The notes under the pieces are model-generated. The model saw nothing but the letters and a program-made list of their open reading frames with translations. It searched no databases and was not told the DNA's origin. 64,000 bases of DNA from Antechinus flavipes. Its lineage: Eukaryota. Below, in pieces: positions 13,634 to 45,592 of the stretch. Position numbers and translations under genes: made by a program. The stretch spans positions 56,358,001 to 56,422,000 of the forward strand of contig NC_067404.1 of assembly GCF_016432865.1 (NCBI RefSeq), read 5' to 3'. Position 1 is the first letter of the stretch. Each line of letters opens with the position of its first letter.

Positions 13634-13804
<171 letters not shown>

Positions 13805-14803
13805 TAAAGGAGCCTGGGTAGAGGTTTTAAAAAGGCAAATATTCAATGAAGGAGGGAGGGTAGTGGGAGTAGAGGATGCTGGGAGGGAGCCTGGTAGGAG
13901 AGCTACAGGAAACACTAAAAGATTGTGAACTGGAACTTGAAGGAAGGGAGGAATGAGGGGGTTAAAAAGCCGAAGGGGACATGATCCCAGTCTGTAAAAT
14001 CACCATGGGCGTGCTAAGATGGAATGTGAACTTTAACAGCCAATCCTGGAAATGGAGTAGGGTGGCCTCTTCTTCCTGGTGTTTTTCAGAAAAGTCTGCA
14101 ACTGTCCCACTACCTCTTTGCAGATAGACAGCTAGTGATCCCACTCCCTTTTTCTTCATCTGAAAAAATAGTTGGACAAAGCAGCTGTACTCCATTCTAT
14201 TTTGAGTGCAGTACCTGACAGGGACTGGGTTAAACCCAAAGCCCTGGTTGACTCAATCTGTGCCCTAGGCAAATGGGAGCACCCAAAAATCAAGAATAGG
14301 AATTAGCCCTGAAGTCTGGAGAGAGCCGTCATCATCTCTCATAGTGCCCCCCCTGGAGTTTGGCGGAGCTTGGTAGAACGGCTTCAGTGTGGGGAGGAGA
14401 GAGCCATTCCACTAAGCCAATTCAAATTCAAGCCATTCTAAAACGAATCTCCATATTTCCCTAATTTCTCAGTCTTCAAAAACTGACCAAGAAATATTAG
14501 TAACTGGGCTCAAATGAGGTAAAACCATGGGATATCTGGACGGCCAATGAAGCCAGCCAACTTGTTCCCTTTTAGGGAGGAGAGAGGCACCATAGTCCAT
14601 GGAGGCAAATTTTCTTTGCTTTTTCTGGGTGTTTTCCTTGGTTTCCTTTGTCAAAAGTCCATCGAAGCATTTCTGAGAAGTTGTCACCTAAAGAATTCAT
14701 TCTGAAAAATCTAAGCTTTTCCCAAAACTTCCAACTTTGTATCAGGAGTTAGGGTTAGTTGCCCAAGTCAGATGGTCAGCTCAGTTCAAGTTAGTTCAGC
14801 TGA

Positions 14804-15148
<345 letters not shown>

Positions 15149-15425
15149 TAGCATGGGCCGCATAGTAGAGGGAAAAAAGATCTGTCCTTTGAGTCTGATG
15201 ACCTGGGTTCATCTTTATCTTCATCTCATTAGAGTTGGTAGAGACCAGTTTACTGCATCATCTTGTAAGTCCATCTGATCATCAGTTTCTTCATCTCTAA
15301 AATGGAGAGATTTGGCTAAATAATGACTTAGTGAGAGGAGTCAAGTGAGAGGGCTTTGTCACCATAAAGGGATTTTTTCCCCCTACTGAGACTAAATCAA
15401 CAAATTGTTTGATGTTATCTAGACC

Positions 15426-15596
15426 AGACCTGCTTAAACTTTTTCCATTTGAGATCCCATTTGGCCCAAGAAATTTTTGCATGACCCTACGTATATAATT
15501 ACATAAAATAGGTATACAGATCAAACATTTGCTGATAATAAATCATAATTTCATGACCCCAATATTGTTATGTGACCCACAATTTAATAAGCTTTG
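15426..15596. mobile_element. Old hAT-like MITE
   Basis: hAT-type ends (cagacctgcttaaact...cacaatttaataagctttg); 31-bp core at 15522-15552 shared (30/31) with 52806-52836; another remnant near 4790-4857. Confidence 0.5.
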
Positions 15597-18500
15597 ATGT
15601 AGACGATCAATTAATCAACAAATATACCTTAAGTGCCTTCTATGTACCTGCCTTCAGAGAGCTGGAAAGGACCTAAGAGACCCTCTAGTCTCATTTTAGA
15701 GAAGAAATTGAGGAAACTGAGGAAGTTGTGATTTGCCCACAGTCATGGAGGTAATAGGTATCCTAGGGAGAAGAATTTGAACCCGGTCCCTGGGGCTTGA
15801 GGCACAGTGTTTTCCTCCTGGATCGTACCATGTTTCTCAGTCACATCACCATTTGATTGGTGGTGTTTTTCACTAGTATCCGCTAGCCACGTGCCATTGT
15901 TGTCATGTTTGGGCAGAAAATGTTATGAGACTTAAAGCAGTAACCCTAACACCAGTGATTCACATTTATCTGGGGCTTTTACCAATCTTGCCTCATTTGA
16001 GCCTCATGGGCCTCTCTAGGGGATGAGTAGGTTGCAAAAATATTGCCATCACCACCGAAAGAGTACTAAGTAGAAAATGCAGTTCCGAGAAGGGCAGTGA
16101 TCTGCCTGAAGACACAGAGCTAGCAAGTGTTAGTGAGGACCCTTCTCTGCTTTCCTCACTACATATTCAGAAGGCGGGAGTCAGGGTGGGAGGACTTAAG
16201 GGGCCTTAAGTTTTAGGCAGCTTTATTTAATGCCAGCTAATGGCCTACAGACAAACATTAGAACAGCTACTGATCTCAGATCCTATCACTCCAGGGCCTC
16301 TCCCTATGGGTTTCCGTCACACACAGTCTTGATTTTCGGCTGCAGCTAAAAAAGTGTCCAATTAGCAGCAGAGCTGCATTTTATGCTCTCTTGTGAGCAC
16401 ATGCTCCATGGAGTTCTCACTGAGGAAGCAGAAGGTTCTATATGTTTGCCTTTTAAATAAATGACTCTAAATGTGTATCAGGTTCAAAAGTAATTCCAGG
16501 CAAATGTGTTATCTCCTGAAAGCCACAGTCTTTGGAAATTCAGTGTGGAAATTTGTGAAGGTTACCCAGATTCCACCAGCTCCCATGCTCTCCCATATCA
16601 AACCAAAGGGCACAGCCCTGTATTTTGAGCATATAGTAAGATCCCATTTATCCAGGGATTTCTGGCAACCTCAAACAACAGGAATACAACCAAGAACTAG
16701 GGTATCTAAAAGGGCTTCTGACATGCTGGGTGAATTGGTTTAAAAAAAAAAAAACAAGTAGAACCTCCCTAACATGAAGTAATAAGAGTGACAGGAGTCA
16801 GCAGATGCAAGTTCAAATCTCCACATGACCCGTTATGTGTTCTACCCTGTGTCATGTCACCAAGCTGGACTTCAGTTTCCATAACGAAATAAATGAGTAG
16901 GATGTATAGATTGAATTAGATGGTCTCTATGGTCCCTAAGATTTCTTACATGGAACTGGGAAACTGAACTCTACTCTAAGAGACTATGTTCCTATGAGCA
17001 AAGTCTAGGGCAGGACCCAGAAATGAGAGAGTAAGCATTCATCACAAAGCTGGGGTCCAAATTCAGAATAAGAGTCAGGTTTGGAGTGTCAATTTAATAG
17101 CAGCTCAGAACAGGTCAACAGGTCAGCAGGTGAGACTGGCTGCTTCTTTTTAGAGACCTGGTCCATTGTTTGGCTCTTGTGGAGGGGGGAGTGGCTGCTT
17201 GTTCTGGACACCGAACAATTGTTCGGTAGTCAATTATTGCCATTTAGCCCCTGAGCGTGGCCTTTTTATCATCCCCCTCCACTCTTTCAGGACCGACTTC
17301 GCGAAGTTGGGCCTTAACTGTTAAACTCCATAAAGATGACTACCGTCTAGTAGGAATCAAAGATTTTCCTGATGATTCCTAAAGCTTAGCAAAAATTGAT
17401 AACAGCACCATTTCCTTCTTCATCTTTGTCATTTCTGGCAAAGCAAAATTGCTGACAGAAAATAAGTCTGTCTCAGACTTTTTCATATGCTTTTCTGTGA
17501 CTGTCAGCACTATCGTGCCTTTATGTCACTGGCGGTGATTGGATTACAGATGAGGAAAGTGGAACCTGCCCAAGGAAGTCCCATACCCAAGAGGGCAGAG
17601 AAGTGAGCAAAGCACAAGGGATAGAGAGAGCAATCTAATCCCTTGTCTGCCTCTCAGACCAAACTATCTCACCAGTAATTGACAGAAGATAGTTCGGCAA
17701 CAGGAACACGGATGCCTGGATGGCTAGCGTCTGGCCCTCAGATTGGTTACTTTAAAATGAAGGGATTAGACTAAGTGGCCTTCAAGGTTTCCTTCTAGCT
17801 CTGAATCAATGATCCTGCTCAGGAGGTTGTCCAGCCCTGATCTAACCTACTTCAGAAACCTTCTAGAAAAGGACATTCTACAATGTCCAGTGGTAATGTT
17901 CCAACATCCCATAATCCTTGTGCTTGGCAAGAGCTCCCTAAACACAAACCTCAATCCCTCCTGCTTCCTCTTGGGTCCCTTCCCTCTCTTCTTAGTGCAG
18001 ATGGGAACATTTTTTCATCAACTTTCATATGCCTAAAACTGAAAAAGTTCTCAAAAGTTTTCCCCCTTCCCCTCCGCCTTCAGAAAAAGGTTGCCTTTTT
18101 TTCCGAGCCGAGGAGCCCAGACGTTGTCTCCGAGTCCGAGACCACCATGCCAAGCTCCTTCTAATGTATCCCACAGATGAATGTATCCCACAGTTGCTAA
18201 TGCCACTCTTTCCAAAGCATCCCACGATTAACTTTTAGAGCCAAAACTAAGATGTGGACATCACAGTAAATATTTACATCTGTTTCAACCTAGCTGTGGA
18301 AGACTTTCCTTTAAACTTGACCATGAAACTCATTTTTCTTCCCCATCACGATGGGACTTTCTCAAATTATTGGTGAAGCTTCCCAGTCCAGCCTGTTTTG
18401 TGTTTTTTCAGATGCTCTTTTCAATCCCTGTCCTTCTTCCAGGAAAGTGGCAAATCCAAACACTATTCAGGGTGTACTGATGGAGCTTAGTTTTAATATT

Positions 18501-18692
18501 CATGGTAAGCGTTCAGCCAAGCCAACCATAGATTTATTACAGTACTGCTGGGGCTCCTTCCAATGTAAACATCAGCAGAAGCCTCTTTCCCAGTGTTCCT
18601 GGAGCAGGCCCCATGTTCAACTTTCCCATGCTGGAGCTTCAATCTGTTCTCCATTGTGGCTTTCATATCTGCTTTCCAAGGGAAGGCAATAA

Positions 18693-18926
<234 letters not shown>

Positions 18927-21114
18927 TAAGCGGTGGTCTTTTCAGGGGCTGAGAGCAAAGATGGAAAGGTTCTCCCCAATGCCACTGTGCTATGTGAATG
19001 TATGAAAGCAAGGAGATGTGGAGAGTACTGCTCCCAGGTGCTTTGGGCCAATCTTGGGTTTGGGCAGGCTTTCTATCTGGCCGATCCCCGAGGTGTCTCT
19101 CGCTACTTTCTGATCCTCACCACCTCCAGAGTGAATAGGACAAAGAAATGCGGTCCCAGAAACAGCAGCTCCCAATCAAGGCACCTTCCCAAATGGACAC
19201 CCAGTTGGCTGAAGGACAACTGACTCCCCTTTGATTTGGGCTGGTGGTGGGTGGTAGCTACTTGGCAATGAATGGAAAGGAGTGCTGCTGACCTTCTCCA
19301 GCCAATGTGTGCTCATTTCTCTTCCCACAGCCTCCATTTCAAAAATCACCCCTTTCAATGAGTAGGTATTTATAGTCCTTCCTAACAGGTTTTTCTATGT
19401 CAGAAGCATCAGGGAGGAGAGGCTTAATGGTTTTCCTCCTGTGGTCTCAATAGACCCTAACTTAAGCACTCAAATGACTTCCTGCCATTTTTATCCCTGC
19501 TGAAAAGGCTTCTGGAGCCTTAGTTTTCTCTTTCTTTTCCCAGCTCTTAAGCAGCTGCCTTTTAATTCCACCTCTTAAGGAGTTGCCTTTAGCTGGGTGA
19601 ATAATGTACCTTATCTAGAGGGGAGAGACACACCTTGCTTTGTCTCGCTAATCTGGCTACCTGGCCTTTTTCCTCCCTGGAATGTGGGAAACCCCTCCTC
19701 TCCACCCTTCCTTCCTCATCCTTTGTCTGGGGCTGCCCTTAGCTAGGACTTCCCAAAGGGATGATGGACACAGGGGCATCGAGATTAATACTCTTGTATT
19801 TACTAGGACAGAAAGGCCTCGGTATGGAGGCCATTCCATCGCAGGCTGCTATTTTGCACCATTCATTTCCAAAGAGGAAATGATTCTGAAGTCTGAGGAC
19901 ATTTGGGGGGCCATTTCCTGTAGCAAAGACTGCTTGATTCTTCATCAGAGCCATAGCTAGGAATCTGGACACTTGAGAAGAAATCGGGGGGAGAGGAGGG
20001 CTGGGGAAAAACCTCAGATTTCAGAACACAGGGCCACAGGGGTGGAGAGGCAGAAAATCTGGAACGCTGCTGCTGTTCCAGTGGCCGAGGCCACTGGAGA
20101 AGGGAGCACTGCAAGGCTGGAAAAGTGCACTAGAAAGTGGGGCCAGCCTTGGGATCGGGATCCAACCTCAGGTAGCTCCCCCTACATCACTGATGATCCC
20201 AGGTCCTCCCATGAAAAGTATGGTATGGGACCATCTTGATCAGTTGCAGATATGGTAGAGAGGGAGCGAGCCATCCCCACAAAGAGGCTGAATTTCCTCC
20301 CACAGGATGGCCAAAGAGCCCAGCCCTGAGAAAAAGGTCAAGGGGAAGAGTCAGAAGGAACGATGGTAGTGGGGAAAGGTGGGTCTTAGGAAAGGGGCAC
20401 CTCAGAAATGAGGCTCAGAAGGTTAGAGACCTGGGCCCAGACAAGAGAAGTGAAAGAGGAGTGACTGTGACTGTTGAGGACCAACACTTAGGTCTGAAGC
20501 ACGCTCCTTTCCCTAAAATTGGCACTCAGGAACAATGCCCTAGTCTCTATGGGTGACTATCTACCCTGAGCTAGGGCCTTTCCTATCAGTAACTCAACTC
20601 TTGGGATCAGCATACAAAATGGACCCTCCTCCTACTGAATTCTTATATTCCTGCTAAACATCCTTAGAGAAAGGTAGACGTCGGTAGCTAAGATAGCACA
20701 TGGCCCACCTCGGGAGTACCCCAGGTCCTCTGAGCCAAAGGGCCGACCTCGGATGCAAACTGTAACTGTGGCTGACTTGGGAAGTAGCTTATATTCATGG
20801 AGGGGTGACCAACTATGAAAAGCCAGTGCTCATCAGTCCTCCCCCAAAGAGTATTCCCAACTGCTGACTCCTCTGCTCCAAGTACTAAGCTCTGATGCCT
20901 CTGCCTAGATGAACTGGGAGGGGGGGGTCCCTTCTAGCACTAAACTGGGCCCTTCTGATACTTTTCTCACAACACTCTGAGGCACCATCACGTGGATGGT
21001 GACCTGGAAGACCAAGAAGAGAAGCAGCTCACCTGGAATCGGAGAGCAGCTGGAGGGAGCCAAGGCCGGCGCTGTCTCCAAAGCAACCTGCTGAATTTAT
21101 TTATCTCTTTCCAG

Positions 21115-21169
21115 AGCGACTTGTGGTCCCTTGGAATCACCGCCATGGAAATGGCCGAGGGCGCTCCGC
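21115..21169 (+). CDS. NRK: Kinase exon (alphaF): SDLWSLGITAMEMAEGAP
   Basis: ctttccag acceptor, C|gtgagt donor, 55 nt, phase 0-1. Confidence 0.97.
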
Positions 21170-24100
21170 GTGAGTAACTGTTTGGTCTTTGGTGAGACAC
21201 GGGTGAGGGAGTTGCATATGCCCCTTCGGAGCTTCCACTAGTGGCCTCGTAGATGCCGCACTCGGAGCAAAGTGCCTGGCAGATATTCCGCAGGGCCACG
21301 CGGGTGCCCCAGACTACTCTGAATCAGGATGTCTGTGGACAAACCCCTGCCGAGAGCAGCATGCCGTTCGCTCTCACAAACTACTCTAGCAGGCTGACCA
21401 AATGTTCCTTCAGCTTGGTTTCCTGGTAATAGCTTTTGACAGTACTGAGTCACCAGGAGCCCAGTGGAGTCCTAAGCCACGTGGACTAATGGTGAAGTTA
21501 GGCTTCTGAGCCGTAAGGAGGCAGTCCTTGCGGCAACTCCTCCAAGGCCTGGCTGGCTTCTGGGAGCCTGAGAGCCTAAATGACCTGGCCCAAAGGCAGG
21601 ACCAGAAGAAAAGCTCACATTCTGTTCCATCCCCTTTTTAAAACCACAAGCTCTTTTTCTTCATCAGCTCAAGATTTCTTTTTATATATGAAATAAACTT
21701 AGGTGAACTCCAGCCCCTTTTTCCTTTGAATTTTGACAACAGAGTCAATATTGTCTGCTACCTGGGCCTTCATTTGGGTGGTAGGGCATTGACTTGTTCA
21801 TGAAGCATGGCTGCTAGGCAGCTAAGCGGCACGGCAGTGGGTAGAATTTGGGGCCTAGGTTCAGAAAGACTCATCTTCAAGAGTTAAAAAATTTGGCTTC
21901 AGATAATTACTAGCTGTGCGACCCTGGGCAAGTCACTTCCCTCTATTTGCCTCAGTTTCCTCCTCTGTAAAATGTACTGGAGAAGGAAAGTGTACCTCTC
22001 CAGAATCTTTGCCAAGAAAACCCCGAATGAGATCAAGGAGAGTTGGACATGACTGAAAAATGACTCAACAACAATAAAAAATTTAATCCCAATTGCCTCA
22101 AAACAAAGAAGCATGGCTACTTCAAAGTTTGTGACTTTATTCTGTCTTTTTTCTGCTCCTAATTTGTTTCTGGAACCCTTGCACCACATTGGCACTTCTT
22201 ACAGTTTCCAATTTGCTTTCACTGGGATTATCCCATGACTTTTGCCTCGATGCCTCATCTTCAGCATGGCAACCAGGAAAGCCACAGATTTTGCCCTTTG
22301 AGCGGAGTTTTTGTGGTATACCATTGCTCACCCACAGGGAGCTGCTGTGTGGAACCAAGCAGACCTCAGCCTCAGCCAGGGCATGCCCCTAGCTAAAGAG
22401 AGGGCAGAAGAGAACAAGGTCATTCTGTAGCCTATTCCGTGAGGGACCCGGATGCCCACCAAGAGGACCACGACCCTGACCAGCAAGGCTCAGGGCTGTC
22501 CCCAAAAGCCACTTGTAGAGAATGATTCCTTTGTGTTGAAGTTTTCTTTCTAAGAGTCTATTAAAATGTAAATTCCCTTAGAGAGGTTAACTAGTCAAAT
22601 TAATAACAATAATGATAATAATCACATCGTTATGATGACTATACCTGTGATGTCATTGATATAGCAGCTTCTGAGTACTTGAAAACAAGCTCCTTCTACT
22701 TGTGTAGGTTAGCACCTTCTCTGCAACTTAAGAGTCTTGGGACAGTTGCCTAGAACACTGAGTAACTTGAATGACTTTCCTAGGGACATATAGCCAGCTT
22801 TTGTCAGAGACACGACTCGAACTTTGGTTTTCTTGGCTCTCTGTGTACCACATGACATTGCCTAGAATCATAATCACAGTAGTTTAAGTCCTTTGAAGAC
22901 TTGATCTTATTTCATCTTCACAGTGATCTTGTGAGAGAGGTGCTATTATCATCTCCACTTACAGGTGAGAAAACTGAGGCAAACAGGTTAATTGACTTGT
23001 CCAGGATGCTGCAGCCAACAGGCATCTGAGGCAGGATTTGAACTCAGGACTCTGTAATTCTGCTCAGCACTTTGAACCGTTGTATCCTCTTGGCTGTCGC
23101 CTTATGGGCAGTTGTTTTCCAGAATGATAGCGACATCTGGTAAACTGGAATGTGGAGTCACCAGAGAATGGATATAGCAGACAACAGGAATATTCAAAAT
23201 AAGCAAAAGAAGGGTTAGAGCCCTGAGGTCAAAGGTGGGCTGATCATGTGAGAAGGAGAGATGAGTACCACATATTGTCCATGTCCAACGTAGATTCACA
23301 GATTTGGAGCTGGAAGCCTTTGAAGTCATCTTCATTCTGTAAATAAGCCAAAGGGGACCTAAAGAAGGAAAGAGACTTGTCCAAAGTATTCCATATAATC
23401 ACAATTGGGTAGCCGAGAGGATGCTTCGGAGCCATCTTTTAGGCTTTCATTTGTGGCAGGGCACCAACTAGCTTATGGAGCATGGCTGCTGGGCAATTAG
23501 GTGGCAGTGCATCAGTCCAACCTCATTTTACTAAGAAGGAAACTGAATCCAAGGGAGGGAAAATGATTCGTTCAAGATTGCCCAGGATCAGAAGAGCTGG
23601 AATACACTTCCGAAGTCATCCAGTCTAGTCCCTCTAACTTTACAGAAAAACAAACTAAGGCCCAGAAAGGGAAAGTGACACCCAAGGTAGCAGTCGGTCA
23701 CTGACCGAACATCAGGCATTAAGGATTGTGAGCTTTTGAGCCTTGGCCTAACTCTGCCTTCAGTTTGAGATGGGTCCCTTCCTTCTGTCAGTGTATATAT
23801 GTAAGTAAGAGGACAAAATTTGCCCCCTGACCTGCTCCATTCATTTAGTATTAGCTGGATAAGTACAGGGCTTGCTTCTGCCTGCCTGTCTGGGAAAGGC
23901 CCATGAAACTTTCCTGTTCCTCTCGAGATGTGTTTGGGGGAGAGGGAAGATTGGAAGGGACCATCCCTAGCAAACGGTCTTAACATTGAAAGGAATTCAA
24001 AGGCCCTTGGGAAGAGAGTAGGCAGGCTCTCTGTGCAAGGGCCTTTTGCCTTGTCAGCTTTCTTTGACCAAAGCTCAAGAGGAAATAAGTGGGGTGAGAC

Positions 24101-24775
24101 ACATATTTTAATGCTTACAGACAAACCCAACATTCTCAAACCAGTGAGGTAATGAGCTTGGGAAGCTCAGATCAAGTTGTTGGTTTGTTGGGGGTTTTTT
24201 CACATTTATAAAAACAAAAATGAAGCCTAATAATTAGACTCAGAATCCGAAATATCAAAGGTAGCTGAAGTATACTGTACCTAGGAAGTGCAGCCCCCCC
24301 CCCCCCAAACCATTTTCCTGTGGTTTTTGAGAATGCTAGTCTTCTTTCTTTTGTTTATTGTTGTGTAGAGTGAGCTGGGAGCCTGGATGACTTGTCCAAC
24401 TTATAATTACTTCTCCCAGCTGGAGATCCCTGCCAAACAAAAACACAAGCGGAAGCCCACCCTTGCCTCAGAATTTGATTTCCACATTTAGGTGCAATTC
24501 GCCTATCATGCTTCACCGCGGAGAAGTTGTGCAGTGTCCAATTTACCATTGATTTGTCGATTGTATTTTTATACACCTGGAGAGGATGAAGCTTTAGAAT
24601 CTCTTGGGACTGTGCTGATTATGTTCAAATGAGTCTTTAATTATATTCTCTTAGTTATGAGAAGAAAATGCCTAGTTACTACTACATGGCATGTTTTTAA
24701 GCAGAGCAAAATGTATCATCGATAGGCAAGGGCCGGTATGCTATATAGGCAGCTTTGTTTCAGTGCTTCTAATGA

Positions 24776-24874
<99 letters not shown>

Positions 24875-25499
24875 TAAGATTAGACATCTTAATCTGTCTC
24901 ATGATTTGGCTCAGCCCTTCCCCATAACAATATAACAATAACAATAAATGTTTATTGACTGACTGACCGTCTAGCCAAGGAGAAAATTCTGTCCATTTGG
25001 GCAATTAGTCTCATTTCCCTATTGCTATTAGCTTGTGTCTTAGCTAAAAGGTCCAACTCGCCAGTTGGTGTTGAGTTGGCCAACTAGTAATAATATTCAG
25101 CCCCTCAGTATGTTACGATCACTACATTACTGCATAACATCAGCAGGTACTTTTTTTTCCACCCTCATTTCTGGGTATCATCTTCTTCTTTTACTCCCTT
25201 CCTTCCCTCCCCCCCCCAAAAAAAATGGAACCTGGTGGAAACAGATGAGATGGCCAACTGGAGTTAGAGGTATAGTCATTGGCTGTGGAACAGAAACATC
25301 TCCCTAATCCACATAGGGATGGAAACCCTAAATTTGGCCTCATTTGCAATCAGAAGGGAGCTTATCAGGACTGGTACTAGAGCTCTCCCAGAGAAAACAG
25401 TACCAATGATTTAATGATTGGTTTTCTTCCTTTTGAATCATTGTTACTCTTCCCATAGATTTGATTTCTCTCTGAATGAGCTAGCTACAAGACTCATTT

Positions 25500-25812
25500 C
25501 CCTTTTAAAAATTTATTTGTTTTTAACATTCATTTAAAAATTTTGAATTCCAAATTCTCTCCCTCTCTCCCACCCTCCCCCCACTCATTGAGAAGGCAAG
25601 TGATATATCCATTATACATGTGAAATCATGCAAAACATTTCAGTATTAGCCATGATTAAAAAATAAACAGCAAGAAAAATAAAGTGAAAAGGTTACGTTT
25701 CAGTTTTCACTCAGAGTTCAGAAGCCACATCTCTGGAGGTGGATGACCTTTCTTCAGCATGAGTCCTTCATAATTGTCTTGGATCATTGTATGGATCAGA
25801 GTAGCTAAATCT
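25500..25812 (-). mobile_element. L1 3' end fragment
   Basis: marsupial L1 3' UTR pattern; related fragments at about 35450-35810 and 63560-64000. Confidence 0.7.
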
Positions 25813-26265
25813 ATAAGACCTGATTCTTAACCTTGATTATAAGCAGCCTTATGACCCTTCTTGTGAGCACAGGAAGCTCTAGTGCCTCCGTTATCCTCTC
25901 TTTGGAACATACAGTTTAGGGTCTGTACCTTAAAAGTATAGTGTAATAATTTAATCAAATCCATGTTGACAGTCAAACAGGATCCCTCAAAGCGAAAGAG
26001 TAAATTCACTGTGCTCTGAACTGTCTAGTGGGGCTGCCTATATAGATTTGATTAACCAGACTATTTCCAACTCTCTTCTTTATACTGTGGAGACAAAGCA
26101 ACCAGCTTGTTTGCTTTGAAAATGTCACTGGGCCTTGCCACTCTTCCTGAGAAGCTCAATGGTGTTGTTGACCCTTAGCCATTAGGCCACACAGCAATTT
26201 AAGTTAGGAAATATAAGACTTGGGAGCTCCTTTCAAAAACCTGTCATACATATCCTTCTGTTTGA

Positions 26266-26484
<219 letters not shown>

Positions 26485-27853: not shown

Positions 27854-27950
27854 ATGAAACTGAATATGAATACAGTGGAAGTGAAGGTGAAGAGGAGGAA
27901 GAAGAAGAGGAAGAGGAAGAAGAGTTAAATGAAGACCAAGGAGAGCCCAG
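27854..27950 (+). CDS. NRK: Acidic exon: (D)ETEYEYSGSEGEEEEEEEEEEEELNEDQGEP(S)
   Basis: ttttcag acceptor, AG|gtgagc donor, 97 nt, phase 1-2; family ETEYEYSGSE and GEPS motifs; 12-Glu run. Confidence 0.95.
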
Positions 27951-28679: not shown

Positions 28680-30552
28680 CTCCATAGTGAATCTTCCTGG
28701 TGAATCTACCCTCCGAAGAGAGTTTCTCAGGCTGCAGCAGGAAAACAAGAAAAGCCCACTTTCCAAGGAGCAACAACTGAAACGAGAACAGCAGCAGCAA
28801 CAGCAACTGATGTGGCAACGTTTGGAGAAGGAGCAGAGAGAACTACAGCAGAAACAGCAAGATCTGCAGCAGAAGCAGCAAAATCTGCAGCAGAAGCAGC
28901 AAGATCTAAAGCAGAAGCAGCACGATCTGCAACAGGAGCAGGAAGCTCTTCAGCAGGAGCAGCAAGCTCTTCAGCAGGAGCAGCAAGCTCTGCAGCAAGG
29001 CCAGCAAGTTTTGCAACAAGAAAAGCAAACTCTGCAGCAGAGCCAGCAAAACCTGAAACAGGACCAGCAAGCTTTACAGCTGGACCAGAAAGATCTGCAG
29101 CTGGACCAGGAAGCTCTGCAGAAGGACCAGGAAGCCCTGCAGCAGGACCAAAAAGCCCTGCAACAGGACCAGATAGCCCTGCAGCTGGACCAGAAAGCCC
29201 TGCAGACGGACCAGCAAGCTCTGCAGCCAGACCAGAAAGCTCTGCAGCAGGAGAAACAGGCACCAGAGCTACTGCCTAAGCCTCAGAAACCTCCGCTATT
29301 GCCAAAGCTGCAACTACCACAGCAATCAGAGCCTCATCAGGAACAGCAGCCACCAAAACAGGAGCAGCAGCTACCAAAGCAGGGGCAGCAGCCACCAAAG
29401 CAGGGACTGCAGCCACCAAAGCAAGAACAGCAGCCACCAAAGCAAGAGCAGCAGCCACCAAAGCAGGAGCAGCAGCCACCAAAGCAGGAGCAGCAGCCAC
29501 CAAAGCAGGAGCAGCAGCCACCAAAGCAGGGGCTGCAGCCACCAAAACAAGAGCAGCAGCCACCAAAGCAAGAGCAGCAGCCACCAAAGCAAGAACAGCA
29601 GCCACCAAAGCAGGGGCAGCAGCCACCAAAACAGAGCCAGCAGCCACCAAAGCAGGGGCTGCAGCCACCAAAGCAGGAGCAGCAGCCGCCAAAGCCAGGG
29701 CAGCAGCTGCCAAAGCCGGGGCAGCAGCCACCAAAGCCGGGACAGCAGCTGCCAAAGCCGGCATCCCGACAGCAGGTACAACAAGCTCCAGACCATCACT
29801 GGTTGCATTTTCCACCAAAGCCCAACCATCACCACACACAGCTGCTACCAAAGCATCTAGCCTATTTCCAGATACAGCAGTCATCACATATGTCAACCCA
29901 TCACCACACACAGCTGCTGTCGAAACATCACCTACAGCAACCATCAAAGGTGTCGGTCCATTACCAGGTACAGCATCCACCAAAAGTGCTAGTCCATCAC
30001 CAGACGCAGCAGCCACCAAAGGTGCCACCTCATCACCAGGCCCAGCAGCCACCAAAGGTGCCGCTCCATTACCAGTCCCAGCAGCCACCAAAGGTGCCAC
30101 CCCATCAGCAGGCCCAGCAGCCACCAAAGGTGCCACCACATCTCCAGATGCAGCAGCCACCAAAGGTGGTGCTCCACCATGTTCCTCAGCCACTAAAGGT
30201 GACGGTCCATAACCTGACTCAGCCATCACCAAAGTCTCTCCAGCTGCCAGCTTATCACCAGGGAAAGCAACTATCTCATCACCAGTCGCCACAGCAATCA
30301 GCTCAGCAGCTGACCCATAACCAGTTGAGGCAGCCATATCACCAGCCCCAACAACCAACTCAGCAGCTTTCACAGCAAGCAGCCCAGGTGAAACAGCGTC
30401 CACAGCAGACACAACTGCAACCAAAGCAACAACAGCAACCACAGCAGCAGCAACAGCAATTCAAAGACCAGGATAAGACCAAGGATCCAGTCCTGACTGA
30501 GTGGCAGAAATGCAAGGAGCAACAGAAAGAGCAGAAAAAGAAACCTGAGGAT
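28680..30552 (+). CDS. NRK: Giant 1873-bp exon: [23 protein letters not shown], then Q/P/K/H tandem repeats, then LTEWQKCKEQQKEQKKKPED
   Basis: ctttag acceptor; lies inside the 648-aa ORF 28642-30588; GAT|gtaaga donor; phase 2-0. The two ends match the two ends of a single ~70-aa MAP4K4/TNIK exon. Confidence 0.9.
28840..29259 (+). repeat. Coding tandem repeat block 1: 20 x 21 bp, xLQQ[K/E/D]Qx heptads
   Basis: ELQQKQQ DLQQKQQ ... ALQPDQK ALQQEKQ, Leu every 7th residue with no indels. Confidence 0.95.
29344..29763 (+). repeat. Coding tandem repeat block 2: 20 x 21 bp, QQPPKQ[E/G]
   Basis: cagcagccaccaaagcaggag consensus, counted directly. Confidence 0.95.
29926..30234 (+). repeat. Coding tandem repeat block 3: about 9 x 33-36 bp, HHQxQQPPKVxx
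   Basis: HYQVQHPPKVLV HHQTQQPPKVPP HHQAQQPPKVPL HYQSQQPPKVPP HQQAQQPPKVPP HLQMQQPPKVVL, with degenerate flanking units. Confidence 0.9.
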
Positions 30553-34739: not shown

Positions 34740-34904
34740 AAAAAACCAGAAGATGCTCCACAGGTTAAAAGATTTCATCGGACCCTTCCCAAAGATCAAG
34801 CTCAGCTCTTATTTCTACAATATGATCACAAGCCACAGAGCAAAGAAACTTCAAAGGCTTTGAAAAAGACTCCGACTTCTTCCCCAAGCACCTCAAAGAA
34901 AGAG
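34740..34904 (+). CDS. NRK: Exon: KKPEDAPQVKRFHRTLPKDQAQLLFLQYDHKPQSKETSKALKKTPTSSPSTSKKE
   Basis: long pyrimidine tract then taaag acceptor, GAG|gtaaaa donor, 165 nt, phase 0-0; DQAQLLFLQYDH resembles MAP4K4 EQAYLLSLQHDH. Confidence 0.85.
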
Positions 34905-37900
34905 GTAAAATTTATTCTAGATAATGTGGTACAATTTTCCCAGCAACTTAAGATGTATAGATAAGGCGACACATCTAGTTATTCATACATTGTCTCCTGA
35001 AATAATACCACACTTGAACTTCCTCTCTGATAGCCAATAGCCACATGTGTCTTCTCTGACCCTGTGGGTTTGGTCCACTTCACCATGGAGCTGCTGTAGG
35101 ATACAAGCATGGGGTTAGAATTCAGGAGCACTCATTCTATGGTTCACACTACATTAAGAGAGTTCATGATCAATCAAGCAAGCATCATTTTTCAGTCTCC
35201 TCACCAGTTTTCTGCTCTCATTAAAAAAAAAAAAAACCTCACACTGATTCTCCAGTCTCCTGATTAACTTTTTCATGGCAGCAAAAAGTTACAAAGGTCT
35301 GTTCTTCTGTCAAGCATTGCCAAGATCTTCCTGGCTCCCCTTGGTTCATTTGTTTTACTGGTCCTCTTAGAAGTTATTCTTTAGAATTTTTTAACTGAAA
35401 CTGGGATAGGGAATGGTCTGTCAGTGCTTTGCTTTCACTTAAAAAAAATGTTTTATTGATACTCTTTTAAAAATAATAGCCTTTTATTTTCAAAATACAT
35501 GTAAAGATAGTTTTTAACATTCACCCTTGAAAACCTTGTGTTCCTAAATTTCGTCTCCCTCCCTTTCCCCTATCCTATTCCTCTAGATGACAAAGTAATC
35601 CAATATATATTAAACATGTGCAGTTCTTCTACACGTATTTTCACGATTATCATGCTGCATAAGAAAAATCAGATCAAAAAGGGGAAAAAATGAGAAAGAA
35701 AACAAAAAGCAAGCAACAACAAAAAGGTGAAAATGCTATGTTGTGATTCACATTCAGTCCCCACAGTTCTCGCAGATGGCTCTCTCCATCACAAGTCTAA
35801 GTAGTCATTGTGGTAAGCAATCATGACATAATGAAACATTTAAATTGGCAACAGAGGAAGAGTTCCTAGGGAAACTGGGTTACTAAACTCATTACTCCAA
35901 GCTTGAAATTCCTCTGCCTCTCCTTTCCCTTCTCCACTCCAGGATTCCCAGCAGAGGAAGGGGCTTTATGTCTCCTTCGATAAAGCCACTTTTGTGACCC
36001 TACTTATGCTAAATCTGAAGGCACAGCTGGGGCAGAAGCAAGACAAGGTTCATGGAGTTTCATGGCTCACTCTTTAAGAATCACTATTGTAAGGCCTAAG
36101 TAATAGCCAATTCTAACTATGTTTTTTTCTTGTCTGTAGTAATAGATTTATGCAAGGAAGGAAAAAAGGAAGGAAGAAGGAGAGAGGGAGAGAGGAAACA
36201 AGCATTTATTAACTCTTTGGCATATTCCAACATATTCCAGACACTGTGCTACAAATACAATAAATAAATAAACAGCAACAACAACAAAAGAAAAAAACTT
36301 GAGACAGTCCCTTTCATTAGGTAGTTTGCATTTTAATAAGGGAAGGTAATTCATATAGGACAGTGATGACCAGAAAACATCAGAAAAAGCAAATAGAGCC
36401 ATCAGGTTGAATACTCTTTCTAGGAGAGTGTTTATATGATTTGAATAGGGAGGAGGTATGTGTCTGGAAGACAGATGGCGAGAATGTAGTGTGACAGATC
36501 TGAGGGCATCTAGATATGGTAAACTCTCAGCAATTGTAATTTCAGGACCCCAAGTTGGGTGCTAGATCAGAGGAGAGGGCAGAGCTCAGTAGCACAGAAG
36601 GAAGATGAAATCTAAAGTTCAAAATTCTATTAACCCAGTCAATTAGATCGTGATGTTAATGGCAACTTCTATTCGTGTGCAAGAAATATAGCATGGCCAC
36701 GGCCTGAACTTCTAATCCCAGATAACCATTTATTAAAAGTATCCTAAGGACAATGGAGCGGCTGAGAGTATGTGAATTCTGTGTGCACAGCCCTCCCCAT
36801 GTACAAATACGAGTCCCATGTTGATGATGTATCAGAAGACTTGTTTTCATCTTGTTATTACTGATCAACATCAGGACCCCAGGTCATTGCCTTCTTTTCC
36901 TTAATCACTGTTGCTGTGAAACCTCCCAGTGGCAAATCTCCATTCCATACTTGCCCAATGATACTAAAAGAGTCCTTTAAAGTGAATGATGTTTATTGCT
37001 CTATAAATCCTAACCACTGGCAGAAGAGTTTGTTTTACCAAGGGGGGACACTGCATCTTCACTGAAGTCTTGCTCAATAATGTGTTGCTCTTGGTCTCAA
37101 GGAATAATACTTAGGTCATCACCTCATTCTGAGAGTTAATAGTAGATCACCCAGATCTGATCACTCAGCTATGCAATCTGTACCTGCTTGTTCGATCACC
37201 TGTGTTTTACATAACATTACTTATTGTTATTCTTGTATTTTTTCTGACTGTTAACTATTTCTCAGAGAAGGTAGGAATGAATGTGGAGGGAAAAGAAACC
37301 CAAAATTTTCAAGGCCTCTGTACATATGGTCAGTGTATTCATTTATATATATATGTATGTATGCATGTATATATACATATACACACATCATATACATATA
37401 TGTATTTTTTTTATTTATAAGATAAAATACTGCCTGTCCAAAATAGGGATTATCTTTCTCATTTCTATCTGTAATCTTTTCTGGGAATTTTGTAACCAGT
37501 TGAGTTCATCACATAACATCTCTGCCTTTATAAATTTATTTTGCATCCACTTCCCAGGGTCAACAATTTTCTGAGAAATCAACTCCCTGAACATAAATAA
37601 AGAGGCTTAGGCTGGGACTATCTGATGCCAAACACCAGGATGAAAAGTGAAAAATGCAGGCAGCCATCCAGATGTTTGATGGCTAAACATCTGGATAGGT
37701 TTAGAGATAAGTGGTTGCCAAAACATCTGCATGATTAGCTGCATTATTTTGTTTCTCATTCAGCTGTTTCCTGACATGTCCAGAAGTTGTATGGTGCAGT
37801 AGAAAGAGAGAGCTAACTTTGGATTCTGAGGGCCTGGGTTTGAATCCTGGCTCTTACCACTTCCAACCTGTGTGACCTTGTGTTTCACTTCACTTCTCTG

Positions 37901-40690: not shown

Positions 40691-41497
40691 ATGGCATAGG
40701 AGTGATGTTTCCTTTATTCCATGAGTTTTAAATCCTTTCTGGCATTTGATTGTGAGGGGGCAAGGACATTACAATGTGGTCCTCAGCTAAACCCCTGGCG
40801 TTTTCCATGGCACTAAATAAGAATCTGGTCTTAGGCTGTCCTTACGCTTGATTCCTATCTTAAGATAAAACATTTGGGGGCTTAGCATTTTTCCATCAAT
40901 AGTAGAGAGATCCAAACTGGAGAAAACTACTATATCAAGGAAGGCTGAAGTCTATTTTGTTGTTTTGTTTTCTGAGTAGCTTCAGAACACAGTTTGGGAC
41001 ATCATGTGTTATCTTCCTGATATGGACTTTAGGGGGCAGATAGAATTTCACATTGATAGATGACAATTCCCATCAGCCACCTAAAATGTGTCATGTAGAG
41101 CTTGCTGGGATTTGGCTATTAAACATATTTTTAATAGAATACTGAATTACCTTTCTTCTTAGGGAGGAGGGCACTGTGTCTGACCTTGAGCAGAGAGACC
41201 CCATTGTTTCCATGGCCACATCAGAGGCCCATACCAGAAACCCTATTTTCTGATCAATATCATCTGTATACTCACAAACGTCCTGGTTCAGGGAGGAACC
41301 CAAGCGTCTAATTCAGAGTATATGTTTAATACCAACATACCTCATCTTGTAGGGCATCTTATTTCAGTTATAATTTAATTCTTTGAATTTCCGAATAAGA
41401 AAAGTAAGAGAAACCAATATTAGAAGAATGGTAAAAAATATATATTTTGAACATCATGTCTTTACCCTCATTCCCACTTTCCTATTTTGTTTTTCAG

Positions 41498-41650
41498 ATG
41501 AACACTAAGACAAAGAAATCTGATGGTGCCCAGACACCTTTCAATTGGACCCTTGCTCTTGCCCATGACTCTGCTCCCCAAATTCGAGTGATTTCTGGCA
41601 GTAGCTCTAGTCCTTGTACACCAGCTTTGCAGAGGACAGGAATAACAAAG
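41498..41650 (+). CDS. NRK: Exon: MNTKTKKSDGAQTPFNWTLALAHDSAPQIRVISGSSSSPCTPALQRTGITK
   Basis: tgtttttcag acceptor, AAG|gtaaga donor, 153 nt, phase 0-0; PALQR matches MAP4K4 PALQRP. Confidence 0.8.
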
Positions 41651-42129
41651 GTAAGATGACCTTTCCTTATCAGTAAGATGATGGACATTCCTCAATTACT
41701 TAAGGAAGGGCTTTGAAGATGCAAAAGGGAAATGTCTGTTTCCAAACATCTGGAGGATCATATGAATTTATCACTTTGGATTTAGATGTTTTGGTGTCAC
41801 AGAAACAAAAGTAGTCAACACAAAATCTGCCTACCGACTCTTCTTTCATCTCCTCCCACCAAAAACAAAAATAATCCTGCCGCCATTATCAACATAGAAA
41901 AAAAGAAAAGAAACAACAAACATTATTTTAGGAGTTCAAATGAACTCACGCTCTAGGAGAAAAGGGAAGGGATTTTTTAAATGGACTTGATCCTATCAAG
42001 AAAATTCATGCTATGGAAACCAAGAAAGATTTCTGACCTACCCTATTACTGTTGTCAATATGGTATAGATTTCCTTGTGTAACACATAAACAATTTGTCC
42101 AGATTGAGTTCCTTGAAATTAATCTTTGA

Positions 42130-43800
42130 TACTGGCTTTTATATGTTAAATTTTCTATTAAGTTCAGGAATCTGCAAGTCTGTTGAATGTCTATTTTTTT
42201 CATTCAATATTATGTATAATTTTGCTGTATATGATATTTTTGGCTGCAGGTCTAGTTCTTTTGATTGCTGATATATATTATTCTAGAACCTGTGGTCTTT
42301 TATTGTAGCTGCCAATGAGTCCTGTACAATTCTAATTATACGTCCAACATATTTGAATTGCTTTTTTTTGTTTCTTGCAAAATTTTCTCTTCAACCTGGG
42401 GGTTTCAAAATTTGGCAGTGATATGCCTACGTGTTTTCCACAAAGGATCTCTTTGAGGTGGTGATCAATGGATTTTTTTTTCTATTTCTACTTTACTCTT
42501 GTGTTCTATCACTCCGGGACAATTTTCTTTTTTTTTTTTTTTTTTAAATGTTTTTAATAGATTTTTATTTAGAAGTTACATGCATGGGTAATTTTCTAGC
42601 ATTGACAATTGCCAAACCTTTTGTTACAATTTTTCCCCTCCTTTCCCCCACCCCCTCCCCCAGATGGCAGGTTGACCAATACATGTTAAATATGTTAAAG
42701 TATAAATTAAATGCAAAATAAGTATACATAGGACAATTTTCTTTAATTATTTCTTACACTATTGTGTTAAGGTCCTTTTTTTTTGTCATAGTTTTCAGGT
42801 AGTCCAATTATTCTTATATTTTCTCTTCCTGACCTATTCTCCAGATCTATTGTTTTTCTAATAAGATGTTTAGCATTCTGGTCTATTTTTTCATTCTTTA
42901 TATTGTGTTTTGTTATTTCTTGGTTTCTTATAGCTTCACTGGATTCCCCTTGCCCAATTCTAATTTTCAAAGAATTATTGTCTTCTTTAGGACTCTATCT
43001 CCTTTTCTAGTTGGTTAAATTTTTTTCATAATCTTGTTTTTCTTGAATGGTTTTTATTTTTTATTTTTAAAAAATTTTCCCTCAATCTCTCTCACTTGAT
43101 TTTAAACGTGTTTTTTGAGTTCTTCTATAAATTCCTTGGGGAAAGGTAGCCATTTAACGTTATTCTTTGGGGTAGAAGAGGATTTTTTTTTAATTTCACT
43201 GCCCTCCTCTGAAGATGAACCCCAATTTTCCTTATTCCCATACTGTTTCTATAGTTGGGTTCTTTTTTCTTTGCCTATTAATTAAAAATAAATAAAAACT
43301 GTTAGTGTAAGCACCTCTTATTGTGGGGGGGTGCCTCTAACTTCCCTTTAGTGATCTGAATCTGGAACCCCAAACCAAGAGCTCCATTCTCCTGCAAGTT
43401 CTGAGAGTCATCAGTCCCTGCCCCCCTCCCCTGCTTCTGCACTTACCAGGTGTGCTGGCTCCTTCTAGCCCAGGGCGGCATCTCAGCAGCATAGCTGGGC
43501 CTGGCTTTCCTGATCAGTAGAGGATCCTCAGTTTTCCTGGACTTAGATCTCTGACTCTCTACACTGTTCAGGAGGTGAAAGTCCCTGTGGTTTGACATGA
43601 GGCTCCCTCCTAACCCAGCTAGTCCCAGGGCTTTCACTGGATGTTTCTGTGGAGCTAGCCTGGAGGTGTTTGTATTTCATCCTGGTAAATCCCAGGCCTG
43701 GGATCTTTCATTTTCTTGGGTTATCCTAGAAGGCCTTCTTTCTGTCCCAAGTCATCTTTGTTTTGCACCAATCTTTGTTCACCCCGACTTTTATGCTTTT
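42130..43800 (-). mobile_element. L1 5'UTR/ORF1 remnant (3'-truncated)
   Basis: minus ORF 42767-42970 contains DLENRSGRENIRIIGLPE (L1 ORF1p motif); GC-richer 5'UTR-like sequence at 43330-43800; boundaries approximate. Confidence 0.75.
42531..42730 (-). mobile_element. Young ~200-bp L1 3' end nested in an older L1, with 14-bp TSD
   Basis: TSD ggacaattttcttt at 42517-42530 and 42731-42744; poly-T tail. Confidence 0.9.
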
Positions 43801-44519
43801 AGACCTACTACTGCACTATCTTCCCAGTATCCTCTCCACAGCTTCTAATCTTGAACAAGCAACCTGGAGCACTGGGAGGAAGTTAGGTAATTTGCTCAGG
43901 ATGACACAGCCTGGGCCTTGCAATTCAGTCTTTTTAGCTGTAAAGCCCGCTCACTACGCCACTATGCTATATTTTCCTTGGCTATAGTCATCAGAAATAT
44001 TCAATTCTGTGTAGAGTGCTAATTTTTTCCATCAGCCTAAATCTTTCAATCTTTGAGACTCAAATGAGGAGTCAAATTCTAATCAGAAGGCCTAGCTCAA
44101 AATTTGAATGACTGGACTGCTCACTCCTTGCCTTGGCTTGTCCTTAGGTAAAACAGGAGCTGTCCCCATTCGACTTGTTTTCCATCTTATTTCTATGTTT
44201 ATCTTCCAGGGCCTAACTGTAAAGCGATTTGAAAATGTGCCATGCAAAAGCCAGTATTGATAGTTCAGTGTCAAGAGAATCTCAGTTTCACTAGGGTGCT
44301 CATGTTGGAATTTAATTCATTTCCTTCAAAGAAACATCTTCTTGGGATTAGGAACTAAGTATTTTGTTATATATTAAAAAGTAACATGTTTGTTTTCAGA
44401 GCTTTTAAAAAAGTACCATAAGATATATGACATGATGTTAAACTAATGAGGTTACAGTATAGCCACTGAGTCTGTGATAACATTGTATATATGTCTCCTT
44501 TCTTTCGATGTATTTGAAG

Positions 44520-44651
44520 AATGAGAACCTTCGACTGAGTAAAGAAAACCAGCACAGCTACTCCCTCTCAGACATGGCCATCAGACCTAAAACCGCGGCG
44601 CAAGATGATGTCTTTAGCAGCATTTCCCCAGCTGAAGATCAGCCTCCAAAG
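44520..44651 (+). CDS. NRK: Exon: NENLRLSKENQHSYSLSDMAIRPKTAAQDDVFSSISPAEDQPPK
   Basis: pyrimidine tract then gaag acceptor, AAG|gtacca donor, 132 nt, phase 0-0; ends EDQPPK like TNIK EDIPPK. Confidence 0.8.
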
Positions 44652-45215: not shown

Positions 45216-45407
45216 CAGGGGTCCTCAAACTTTTAAAATAGGGAGCTTGTTCACTGTCCCTCAGACTGTTGGAGGTCCAGACTATAATAAAAACAAAAAC
45301 TTTGTTTTGCGGGCCTTTAAATAAAGAAATTTCATAGTCCTGGGTGAGGGGGATAAATGTCCTCAACTGCTGCATCTGGCCCGCGGGCCATAGTTTGAGG
45401 ACCCCTG
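45216..45407. mobile_element. 192-bp non-autonomous hAT (Charlie/OC1-like) MITE
   Basis: perfect 16-bp TIRs CAGGGGTCCTCAAACT / AGTTTGAGGACCCCTG; perfect 8-bp TSD ACTTATAG at 45208-45215 and 45408-45415. Confidence 0.95.

Positions 45408-45550: not shown

Positions 45551-45592
<42 letters not shown>

What the first reader, a model, noticed from the sequence alone, without database searches (positions are those of the whole stretch)
28680..30552. One kinase exon expanded about 9-fold by a three-block Gln/Pro/His repeat domain
Seen: a single 1873-bp exon with no stop codons. It starts [23 protein letters not shown] and ends LTEWQKCKEQQKEQKKKPED. Known (recalled): in MAP4K4/TNIK these two ends belong to one ~70-aa exon ([23 protein letters not shown]...[20 protein letters not shown]). 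Inference: about 550 aa of repeats grew inside that exon, giving a coiled-coil rod, then a polyproline/Gln spacer, then His-rich Pro motifs, all right after an intact kinase. This could be a lineage-specific scaffold or condensate module. Eutherian NRK, a placental growth regulator, also carries a large diverged middle exon as I recall, so this may be an independent marsupial remodelling of the same region.
Basis: partly seen in the sequence, partly recalled or inferred. Interest (0 to 1): 0.8.

Follow-up and report, generated by a model that had tools for sequence, protein, structure and literature searches.

The report
Marsupial NRK long repeat exon
This is a real 1.9-kb coding exon of the kinase gene NRK, swollen about nine-fold by three blocks of Gln/Pro/His repeats, but every marsupial examined has the same exon in public gene models, so it is an old marsupial-wide feature and not a new one.

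Summary
Window 28680-30552 (+) is a stop-free, AG/GT-bounded exon of 624 codons. It holds three tandem coding arrays: 21 bp x19, 21 bp x20 and 36 bp x6.5.

The gene is NRK. Its marsupial orthologues sit inside the tetrapod NRK clade with 100/99 support. The exon's two ends align to the single 65-68-aa exon of bird, lizard and frog NRK, so about 550 aa were added inside it.

The expansion is not peculiar to this genome. The same three blocks, in the same order and with the same unique linkers, occur in NRK models of nine marsupials (428-735 aa). They cover Didelphimorphia, Microbiotheria, Diprotodontia and Dasyuromorphia. The window is closest to the Tasmanian devil. Lestari et al. 2022 already state that "therian exon 13" is longer than in platypus and non-mammals.

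RNA contigs from a devil-like animal support the 27950|28680 splice. Related DNA runs show only in-frame indels (+21, -3 nt).

AlphaFold gives one long helix (residues 26-180) and about 420 disordered residues. The heptad has one Leu with Gln at i+4, which fits a Gln-based single helix better than a coiled coil. No SH3 or WW consensus motif is present.

I could not test whether the eutherian long exon shares this origin. An earlier scan note (s1-189943) covers the 12-mer array of this same window.

The parts
28680..30552 (+). Long NRK exon. By exon count it corresponds to eutherian exon 13. It is 1873 bp: 624 codons plus one leading base of a split Ser codon.
   Evidence: Open frame and AG/GT boundaries. 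Orthologous exon in 9 marsupial proteins. RNA contigs start at its acceptor.
28681..28752 (+). Conserved N flank [24 protein letters not shown], the ancestral 5' part of the exon.
   Evidence: Identical or nearly identical in marsupial, bird, lizard and frog NRK.
28843..29262 (+). Block 1: 20 heptads L-Q-Q-(D/E/K)-Q-Q-(A/D/N). It lies within a predicted continuous alpha-helix (exon residues 26-180, window 28756-29220).
   Evidence: TRF 28846-29252. Heptad column counts: L 20/20, Q at i+4 18/20. AlphaFold helix with pLDDT 84-96.
29263..29337 (+). Linker 1 (PELLPKPQKPPLLPKLQLPQQSEPH), unique sequence conserved among marsupials.
   Evidence: Alignment A1.
29338..29758 (+). Block 2: 20 units of Q-(E/G)-Q-Q-P-P-K, predicted disordered.
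   Evidence: TRF. Unit listing. pLDDT below 50.
29788..29856 (+). Most conserved island inside the insert: PDHHWLHFPPKPNHHHTQLLPKH (exon residues 370-392).
   Evidence: Identical in at least 7 of 9 marsupials. Only marsupial NRKs match this region in the word search.
29917..30204 (+). Block 3: about 7 units of 12 aa, Q-Q-P-P-K-V-P-x-H-x-Q-x. Its first 15 bases are the same 15-mer as the core of the block 2 unit.
   Evidence: TRF 29935-30168. Exact CAGCAGCCACCAAAG occurs 11 times in block 2 and 5 times in block 3.
30451..30552 (+). Conserved C flank (QQQQQFKDQDKTKDPVLTEWQKCKEQQKEQKKKPED), the ancestral 3' part of the exon, with a short predicted helix.
   Evidence: Local alignment to ostrich NRK scores 109 against 45+-6 for shuffles. 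Helix 605-618.
27854..27950 (+). Upstream acidic exon (DETEYEYSGSEGE(13)LNEDQGEP), spliced to 28680.
   Evidence: Sequence. RNA contigs carry 57 extra 5' letters, 18 of which lie in bin 27908-28011.
34740..34906 (+). Next exon (KKPEDAPQVKRFHRTLPKDQ...SKKE).
   Evidence: AG/GT boundaries and phase 0. tblastn matches to devil (93%), wombat, koala, wallaby, opossum and ostrich. Skipped in the Gracilinanus and Trichosurus models.
1251..26457 (+). Kinase-domain exons of the same gene. tblastn limits: 1251-1388, 13661-13771, 14885-14983, 18747-18878, 21109-21168, 24797-24874, 26293-26457.
   Evidence: 90-100% identical to marsupial NRK kinase domains. Kinase motifs. Best solved-structure match is MAP4K4, then TNIK, then MINK1.
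41495..60493 (+). Further middle-region exons. tblastn limits: 41495-41650, 44517-44657, 46605-46676, 49607-49702, 57382-57480, 60377-60493.
   Evidence: The CNH-domain exons lie beyond the window.

Best explanation
This is the marsupial form of the long middle exon of NRK (Nik-related kinase, GCK-IV subfamily of STE20 kinases).

Shown:
- In the stem lineage of living marsupials, the short exon that follows the kinase domain grew from about 66 aa to several hundred aa. That short exon is still seen in bird, lizard and frog NRK.
- The growth happened between ...LQQENK and its Gln run. The added sequence is made of in-frame 21-bp and 36-bp tandem units.
- The arrays still gain and lose whole units between species and individuals.

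Inferred:
- Block 3's unit was built on the QQPPK core of block 2.
- The mechanism of growth was replication slippage or unequal exchange.

Predicted or inferred:
- The product is a Gln/Leu helix of about 155 residues, most likely a monomeric Gln-stabilised single alpha-helix.
- It is followed by about 420 residues of disordered Pro/Gln/Lys/His chain.
[quoted passage not shown] - Selection keeps the frame, the composition, the block order and the linkers. It does not keep the exact repeat number.
For: Gene identity:
- The kinase exons are 90-100% identical to marsupial NRK.
- Orthologue P0001 has Pkinase and CNH domains.
- The marsupial proteins nest in tetrapod NRK with 100/99 support.

Ancestral short exon and insertion point.

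Pan-marsupial three-block architecture: exon lengths are 428-735 aa and composition is stable (Q 29-37%, P 13-15.5%, H 5-7.5%).

Conserved islands.

Frame maintenance:
- There are 0 stops against 18.4 expected, and 332 of 624 codons are one step from a stop.
- The frame is open in all nine species.
- Indels in related DNA runs are +21 nt and -3 nt, both in frame.

Transcription and splicing:
- 343- and 340-nt contigs in two RNA-labelled runs begin at the acceptor.
- Each carries 54-57 upstream letters, 18 of which map to 27931-27948.
- Their K77R and H81Q differences match the devil protein.

Structure:
- AlphaFold gives a helix at 26-180 with pLDDT 84-96, and the rest scores below 50.
- Leu is invariant at heptad position 1, Gln is at i+4 in 18 of 20 heptads, and position 4 is polar.
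- Gln(i+4)->Leu(i) side-chain to main-chain bonds stabilise single helices (PMC9674830).

Shared 15-mer between blocks 2 and 3.

Against: - No functional data exist for any non-eutherian NRK (PMC8857918).
- RNA contigs cover only about 20% of the exon (28678-28963, 29385-29477 and a trace near 30404-30507). Full inclusion of the repeats in mature mRNA is therefore not shown.
- Those RNA contigs come from a relative, not from the window's species.
- The helix is a monomer prediction from a 12-row alignment. The heptad Leu is replaced by Pro in much of the Trichosurus array and by Val in Notamacropus, so a helical block 1 is not conserved in all marsupials.
- Two UniRef models (koala, 1200 aa; opossum, 935 aa) splice out most of the repeats.
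- The docking role of the conserved motif rests on conservation alone.
Confidence: 0.6

Rival explanations
1. Tolerated junk. The repeats are neutral slippage products in a disordered linker. Only the reading frame matters, so that the CNH domain is still made. Repeat sequence, helix and motifs have no role of their own.
For: Exon length varies 428-735 aa among species, and unit number differs even between close relatives and individuals. The heptad Leu is not conserved in Trichosurus or Notamacropus. The exon has no Pfam family and no SH3 or WW consensus motif. Disordered middle regions of NRK are said to evolve fast (PMC8857918).
Against: Block order, composition and unique linkers have been kept since the didelphid-australidelphian split. 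A 23-aa island is identical in at least 7 of 9 species. No lineage has lost the insert, although deletions inside tandem arrays arise easily.
Confidence: 0.25
2. Block 1 is a dimerising coiled-coil rod, and the Pro/Gln/His part is a scaffold or condensate-forming module built on its own in marsupials.
For: AlphaFold predicts a long confident helix. The region is 32% Gln and low in complexity. The equivalent region of MAP4K4/TNIK is a charged helical segment (established knowledge). No eutherian protein matched the marsupial repeats in either search.
Against: The heptad has only one hydrophobic position, and position 4 is D/E/K. Pro sits at the Leu position in Trichosurus. The insert has no canonical SH3 class I or II, PPxY or PPLP motifs. 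PMC8857918 attributes the lengthening of this exon to therians, not to marsupials alone. The search blanks are weak evidence, because even bird NRK with identical flanks did not reach the top 150.
Confidence: 0.1
3. Exitron or annotation artefact. Most of the repeat tract is removed as an internal intron, so the mature protein resembles the short non-mammalian form.
For: UniRef models P0159 (koala) and P0154 (opossum) jump over most of the repeats. RNA contigs leave most of the exon uncovered.
Against: RefSeq models in seven species keep the whole exon. An RNA-run contig lies inside block 2 at 29385-29477. The frame is kept open over 1.3-2.2 kb in all nine species, which an intron would not need. 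The short models look like projections from short-exon templates.
Confidence: 0.05

Closest known systems
NRK (Nik-related kinase) of other marsupials, e.g. Sarcophilus harrisii, Monodelphis domestica, Dromiciops gliroides, Vombatus ursinus (RefSeq/UniRef models)
   Same: Same gene, same exon, same three blocks in the same order, and the same unique linkers and flanks. The devil protein is 83-98% identical per exon.
   Different: The number of units differs in each array. The window has about 20 heptads, Gracilinanus about 6 and Notamacropus more than 35. Wombat and koala have extra EKQAPELLPK linkers inside block 1. The heptad Leu is replaced by Pro or Val in some diprotodonts.
NRK of birds, reptiles and amphibians (and the same exon of MAP4K4/TNIK/MINK1)
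   Same: Orthologous exon. The N flank is identical over 23-24 aa, and the C flank aligns with score 109 against 45+-6 for shuffles. The domain plan is the same: kinase, middle region, CNH.
   Different: The exon is only 65-68 aa, has no PPK or His-rich repeats, and is 18-24% Gln.
Eutherian NRK exon 13 and the CK2-inhibitory region (Lestari et al. 2022, PMC8857918)
   Same: By exon count it is the same exon, and it is also lengthened relative to platypus and non-mammals. It lies in the disordered middle region of a placental growth regulator.
   Different: The paper found no non-eutherian homologue of the CK2-inhibitory region. No eutherian protein matched the marsupial repeats here. The eutherian sequence itself could not be fetched, so homology of the two expansions is untested.
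Gln-based single alpha-helices / polyQ helices with Leu at i-4 (androgen receptor, designed (P3-7)n peptides; PMC9674830)
   Same: Concatenated Leu(i)...Gln(i+4) pairs occur in 18 of 20 heptads, and a long helix is predicted without a hydrophobic a/d seam.
   Different: This is a natural tract of about 155 residues inside a kinase. Its monomeric state and stability have not been measured.

Membership tests
NRK orthologue (GCK-IV STE20 kinase) | N-terminal STE20/GCK-IV type kinase domain | tested here: met
   Kinase exons carry [17 protein letters not shown] and GTPYWMAPE. The best solved relatives are MAP4K4, TNIK and MINK1. The exons are 90-100% identical to marsupial NRK.
NRK orthologue (GCK-IV STE20 kinase) | C-terminal CNH domain | not testable with these tools
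   The window ends before these exons. The orthologues that match the window exon by exon do have CNH (P0001: PF00780, E=4e-55).
NRK orthologue (GCK-IV STE20 kinase) | Groups with NRK and not with MAP4K4, TNIK or MINK1 in a tree | tested here: met
   Seven marsupial orthologues fall inside a clade with amphibian, squamate and bird NRK, support 100/99. The window itself was placed through its near-identity to these proteins.
NRK orthologue (GCK-IV STE20 kinase) | Conserved synteny (for example next to IL1RAPL2, as in PMC8857918) | not testable with these tools
   The 64-kb window lies wholly inside the gene.
Canonical two-stranded coiled coil | Hydrophobic residues at both a and d positions of the heptad | tested here: not met
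   Only position 1 is hydrophobic (L 20/20). Position 4 is D/E/K/G/S and position 5 is Q.
Gln-based single alpha-helix | Repeated Gln at i+4 from Leu or another bulky acceptor, within a helical tract | tested here: met
   18 of 20 heptads have L(i)/Q(i+4), and 21 of 27 Leu in residues 26-194 do. AlphaFold predicts a helix at 26-180. The design rule is taken from PMC9674830.
Gln-based single alpha-helix | Monomeric, cooperatively folded helix in solution | not testable with these tools
   This needs CD, NMR or SEC-MALS on the peptide.
SH3 / WW ligand repeats | [RK]xxPxxP, PxxPx[RK], PPxY or PPLP consensus | tested here: not met
   There are 0 matches in the 624-aa exon. The repeated QPPKVP lacks the Arg of the downstream QPPKVPER site.

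The most novel reading that the evidence does not exclude
Marsupials and eutherians may each have built a different new module in the same NRK exon. Eutherians went on to gain a CK2-inhibitory middle region. Marsupials fixed a Gln single-helix spacer plus a His/Trp-rich docking motif (PDHHWLHFPPKPNHHHTQLLPKH). That motif could give marsupial NRK its own regulatory partner, possibly in the yolk-sac placenta.
Probability: 0.12. Interest if true: 0.6.

Novelty: already known. Interest (0 to 1): 0.3.

Why it matters
NRK restrains placental growth in eutherians, and its rapid change in early mammals is an active research topic. Three facts here give context to that story:
- The marsupial long exon is an old repeat-built domain kept in frame.
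- Its array lengths still vary.
- It contains a strictly conserved 23-aa island.

They also point to one concrete test: does eutherian exon 13 descend from the same expansion? As it stands, the feature is already in public gene models and is noted in one sentence of the literature. The gain is descriptive. It is a clean natural example of a kinase linker growing nine-fold by in-frame tandem duplication, and of a long natural Leu/Gln(i+4) helix.

Tried and rejected
1. Pfam scan of the exon found no family.
2. The exhaustive phmmer search with the exon gave only one true relative among the top 150, P0001. The other hits were unrelated low-complexity proteins such as NACHT and Mab-21 proteins, and none had the kinase domain.
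3. I could not reach eutherian or platypus NRK sequences. The hit lists are capped at 120-150 rows and were filled by non-mammalian GCK-IV kinases. A region-only search with the devil His-rich part returned seven marsupial proteins and nothing else. The word filter makes that blank weak evidence.
4. I tested whether the N part of the insert is a duplicate of the ancestral C part. The score was 57 against 54+-6 for shuffles, so I rejected it.
5. I tested SH3 and WW ligand readings of the PPK and PPKVP repeats and found no consensus match.
6. The supplementary files of PMC8857918, which hold the exon-structure figure, are not held in the library.
7. The minus-strand ORFs across the exon are a by-product of the repeat composition and have no support as genes.

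Full report
**Observation**

Translating 28681-30552 gives 624 codons without a stop. It begins [23 protein letters not shown] and ends LTEWQKCKEQQKEQKKKPED. The first base, 28680, completes a split Ser codon. An AG precedes the exon at 28678-79 and a GT follows at 30553-54.

Tandem Repeats Finder reports three arrays:
- 28846-29252, 21 bp x19.4, 80% matches.
- 29338-29758, 21 bp x20, 88% matches.
- 29935-30168, 36 bp x6.5, 82% matches.

In protein terms these are 20 heptads L-Q-Q-(D/E/K)-Q-Q-(A/D/N), 20 heptads Q-(E/G)-Q-Q-P-P-K, and about seven 12-mers Q-Q-P-P-K-V-P-x-H-x-Q-x. The exon is 32% Gln, 15% Pro, 10% Lys, 10% Leu and 5% His.

The coding frame has no stop, while 5000 shuffles average 18.4 stops and never fall below 4. 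In addition, 332 of the 624 codons are one substitution from a stop.

**Gene and exon context**

Kinase-domain exons lie upstream on the same strand, with [17 protein letters not shown] and GTPYWMAPE motifs. The last kinase exon matches solved MAP4K4, then TNIK, then MINK1.

An exhaustive HMMER search with the exon gave a single strong relative, P0001 (E=1.5e-54). It is a 1441-aa Gracilinanus protein with Pkinase and CNH domains. The other listed hits were unrelated low-complexity proteins.

Searching with P0001's exon region returned marsupial proteins named 'nik-related protein kinase' or 'MAP4K4-like'. They come from Monodelphis, Trichosurus, Dromiciops, Notamacropus, Vombatus, Phascolarctos and Sarcophilus. 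NRK of birds, reptiles and amphibians followed.

In a maximum-likelihood tree of kinase plus CNH, the marsupial proteins sit inside the tetrapod NRK clade with 100/99 support. The MAP4K4, TNIK and MINK1 representatives fall outside it.

tblastn of these proteins on the window maps the exons:
- Kinase exons at 1251-26457.
- The acidic exon at 27854-27950.
- The long exon.
- The next exon at 34740-34906.
- Six further middle-region exons up to 60493.

The devil protein is closest, at 83-98% identity per exon, but it is not identical. The window therefore comes from a dasyuromorph relative.

Counting exons, and allowing for the eutherian-only exons 4 and 12, makes this exon the counterpart of eutherian exon 13. 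This correspondence is an inference.

**How the exon grew**

In ostrich, owlet-nightjar, bearded dragon and fire-bellied toad NRK the exon is 65-68 aa. The ostrich version reads [65 protein letters not shown].

The window's first 23-24 residues are identical to it. Its last 41 residues align with score 109, against 45+-6 for shuffled queries. The extra sequence of about 550 aa therefore lies between ...QQENK and the ancestral Gln run.

The idea that the start of the insert duplicates the ancestral C part was not supported (57 against 54+-6).

The exact 15-mer CAGCAGCCACCAAAG (QQPPK) occurs 11 times in block 2 and 5 times in block 3. The 36-bp unit therefore looks like a block 2 core with 21 new bases added. 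This is an inference.

PMC8857918 reports that no transposable element matched the inserted sequences of therian NRK.

**Distribution**

All nine marsupial sequences carry the same three blocks in the same order. They are separated by the same unique linkers:
- EKQAPELLPKPQ...LPKLQL.
- SPDHHWLHFPPKPNHHHTQLLPKHLA.
- QVKQRPQQ...LKDQDKTKDPVLTEWQK.

Exon length ranges from 428 aa (Gracilinanus) to 735 aa (Notamacropus), and the window's 624 aa is ordinary. Composition is nearly constant across species.

The species span American and Australasian marsupials. The domain therefore predates the split of living marsupials, and the arrays have kept changing since.

Related DNA runs show a +21-nt unit gain at 29199 and a 3-nt loss at 30030. 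Both are in frame.

Within the insert the best conserved island is residues 370-392, PDHHWLHFPPKPNHHHTQLLPKH. It is identical in at least 7 of 9 species. A word-based search with the devil's His-rich part found only the seven marsupial NRKs.

**Literature**

Lestari et al. [quoted passage not shown]' They class marsupial exon structure as its own type.

Neither that paper nor Liu et al. 2021 describes the repeat blocks. The function of non-eutherian NRK is called unclear.

It is met for marsupials.

**Transcription**

Two RNA-labelled runs from a devil-like organism each hold a contig of about 340 nt that aligns to 28678-28963. Their K77R and H81Q differences match the devil protein.

Each contig has 54-57 further letters at its 5' end. 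In both runs the depth in bin 27908-28011 equals the contig's depth times 18/104. So 18 of those letters lie at 27931-27948, just inside the upstream exon. The poly-Glu part of that exon was skipped as repeat, and the last AG is ambiguous with the intron's AG. This supports the 27950|28680 splice.

Another RNA-run contig lies in block 2 (29385-29477). The rest of the exon is uncovered, so full inclusion is likely but not shown. Two UniRef models that skip most repeats keep a small exitron possibility alive.

**Structure and mechanism**

AlphaFold2 on the 12-row alignment gives:
- One continuous helix over residues 26-180, with pLDDT 84-96.
- No structure for residues 181-604, with pLDDT below 50.
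- A short helix at 605-618.

The heptad has Leu at position 1 in 20 of 20 units and Gln at position 5 in 18 of 20. Position 4 is polar. That does not fit an a/d coiled-coil seam. [quoted passage not shown]

In Trichosurus many heptads carry Pro at the Leu position, and in Notamacropus Val. Helicity of block 1 is therefore not a marsupial-wide constant.

The insert has no SH3 class I or II, PPxY or PPLP consensus. The repeated QPPKVP noted earlier by the scan (s1-189943) resembles the downstream QPPKVPER site but lacks its Arg.

My best reading is a frame-constrained, mostly disordered tether that starts with a long single helix. It has a few conserved short motifs as probable docking sites. 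The repeat number appears nearly neutral. Function remains untested.

**Open point**

I could not obtain any eutherian or platypus NRK sequence with the tools. Whether the eutherian long exon descends from the same expansion or grew separately therefore remains undecided. The paper's wording implies a therian-stem event.

**Verdict**

- The feature is real, old and already present in public models and the literature, so interest is modest.

Noticed in passing
window 31879-32167: Intronic tandem repeat, 60 bp x5 (83% matches), which gives a spurious open frame (EVRNDGSFQLEGRGGLKG...).
   Followed up: partly
window 28012-28219 and 28428-28635: Two stretches of the intron just upstream of the long exon have read-word depths of 10^4-10^6 in all four runs. 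They are high-copy interspersed repeats.
   Followed up: no
window 27886-27926: The acidic exon before the long exon carries a run of 13 Glu in a row (GEEEEEEEEEEEEEL). The run is 10 Glu in Gracilinanus.
   Followed up: no
window 34740-34906: The exon after the long exon starts KKPED, repeating the KKKPED that ends the long exon. It is conserved as far as birds but is skipped in the Gracilinanus and Trichosurus RefSeq models. It is a possible cassette exon.
   Followed up: partly
window 44640-44657 / 46605-46676: The conserved QPPKVP|ERTTS(R/K)F site (PxxPxR type) is split across two exons. It is kept from frogs to marsupials.
   Followed up: partly
P0159 (koala, 1200 aa) and P0154 (opossum, 935 aa): UniRef models of NRK jump over most of the repeat exon. 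They are likely projection artefacts, but they would mimic an exitron.
   Followed up: partly
window 3108-3240 and 50773-50990: Two N runs (133 and 218 bases) in introns. They were left as they are.
   Followed up: no
window ~45560, ~55270, ~63230: (CA)n microsatellites, seen as THTHTH frames in the ORF listing.
   Followed up: no
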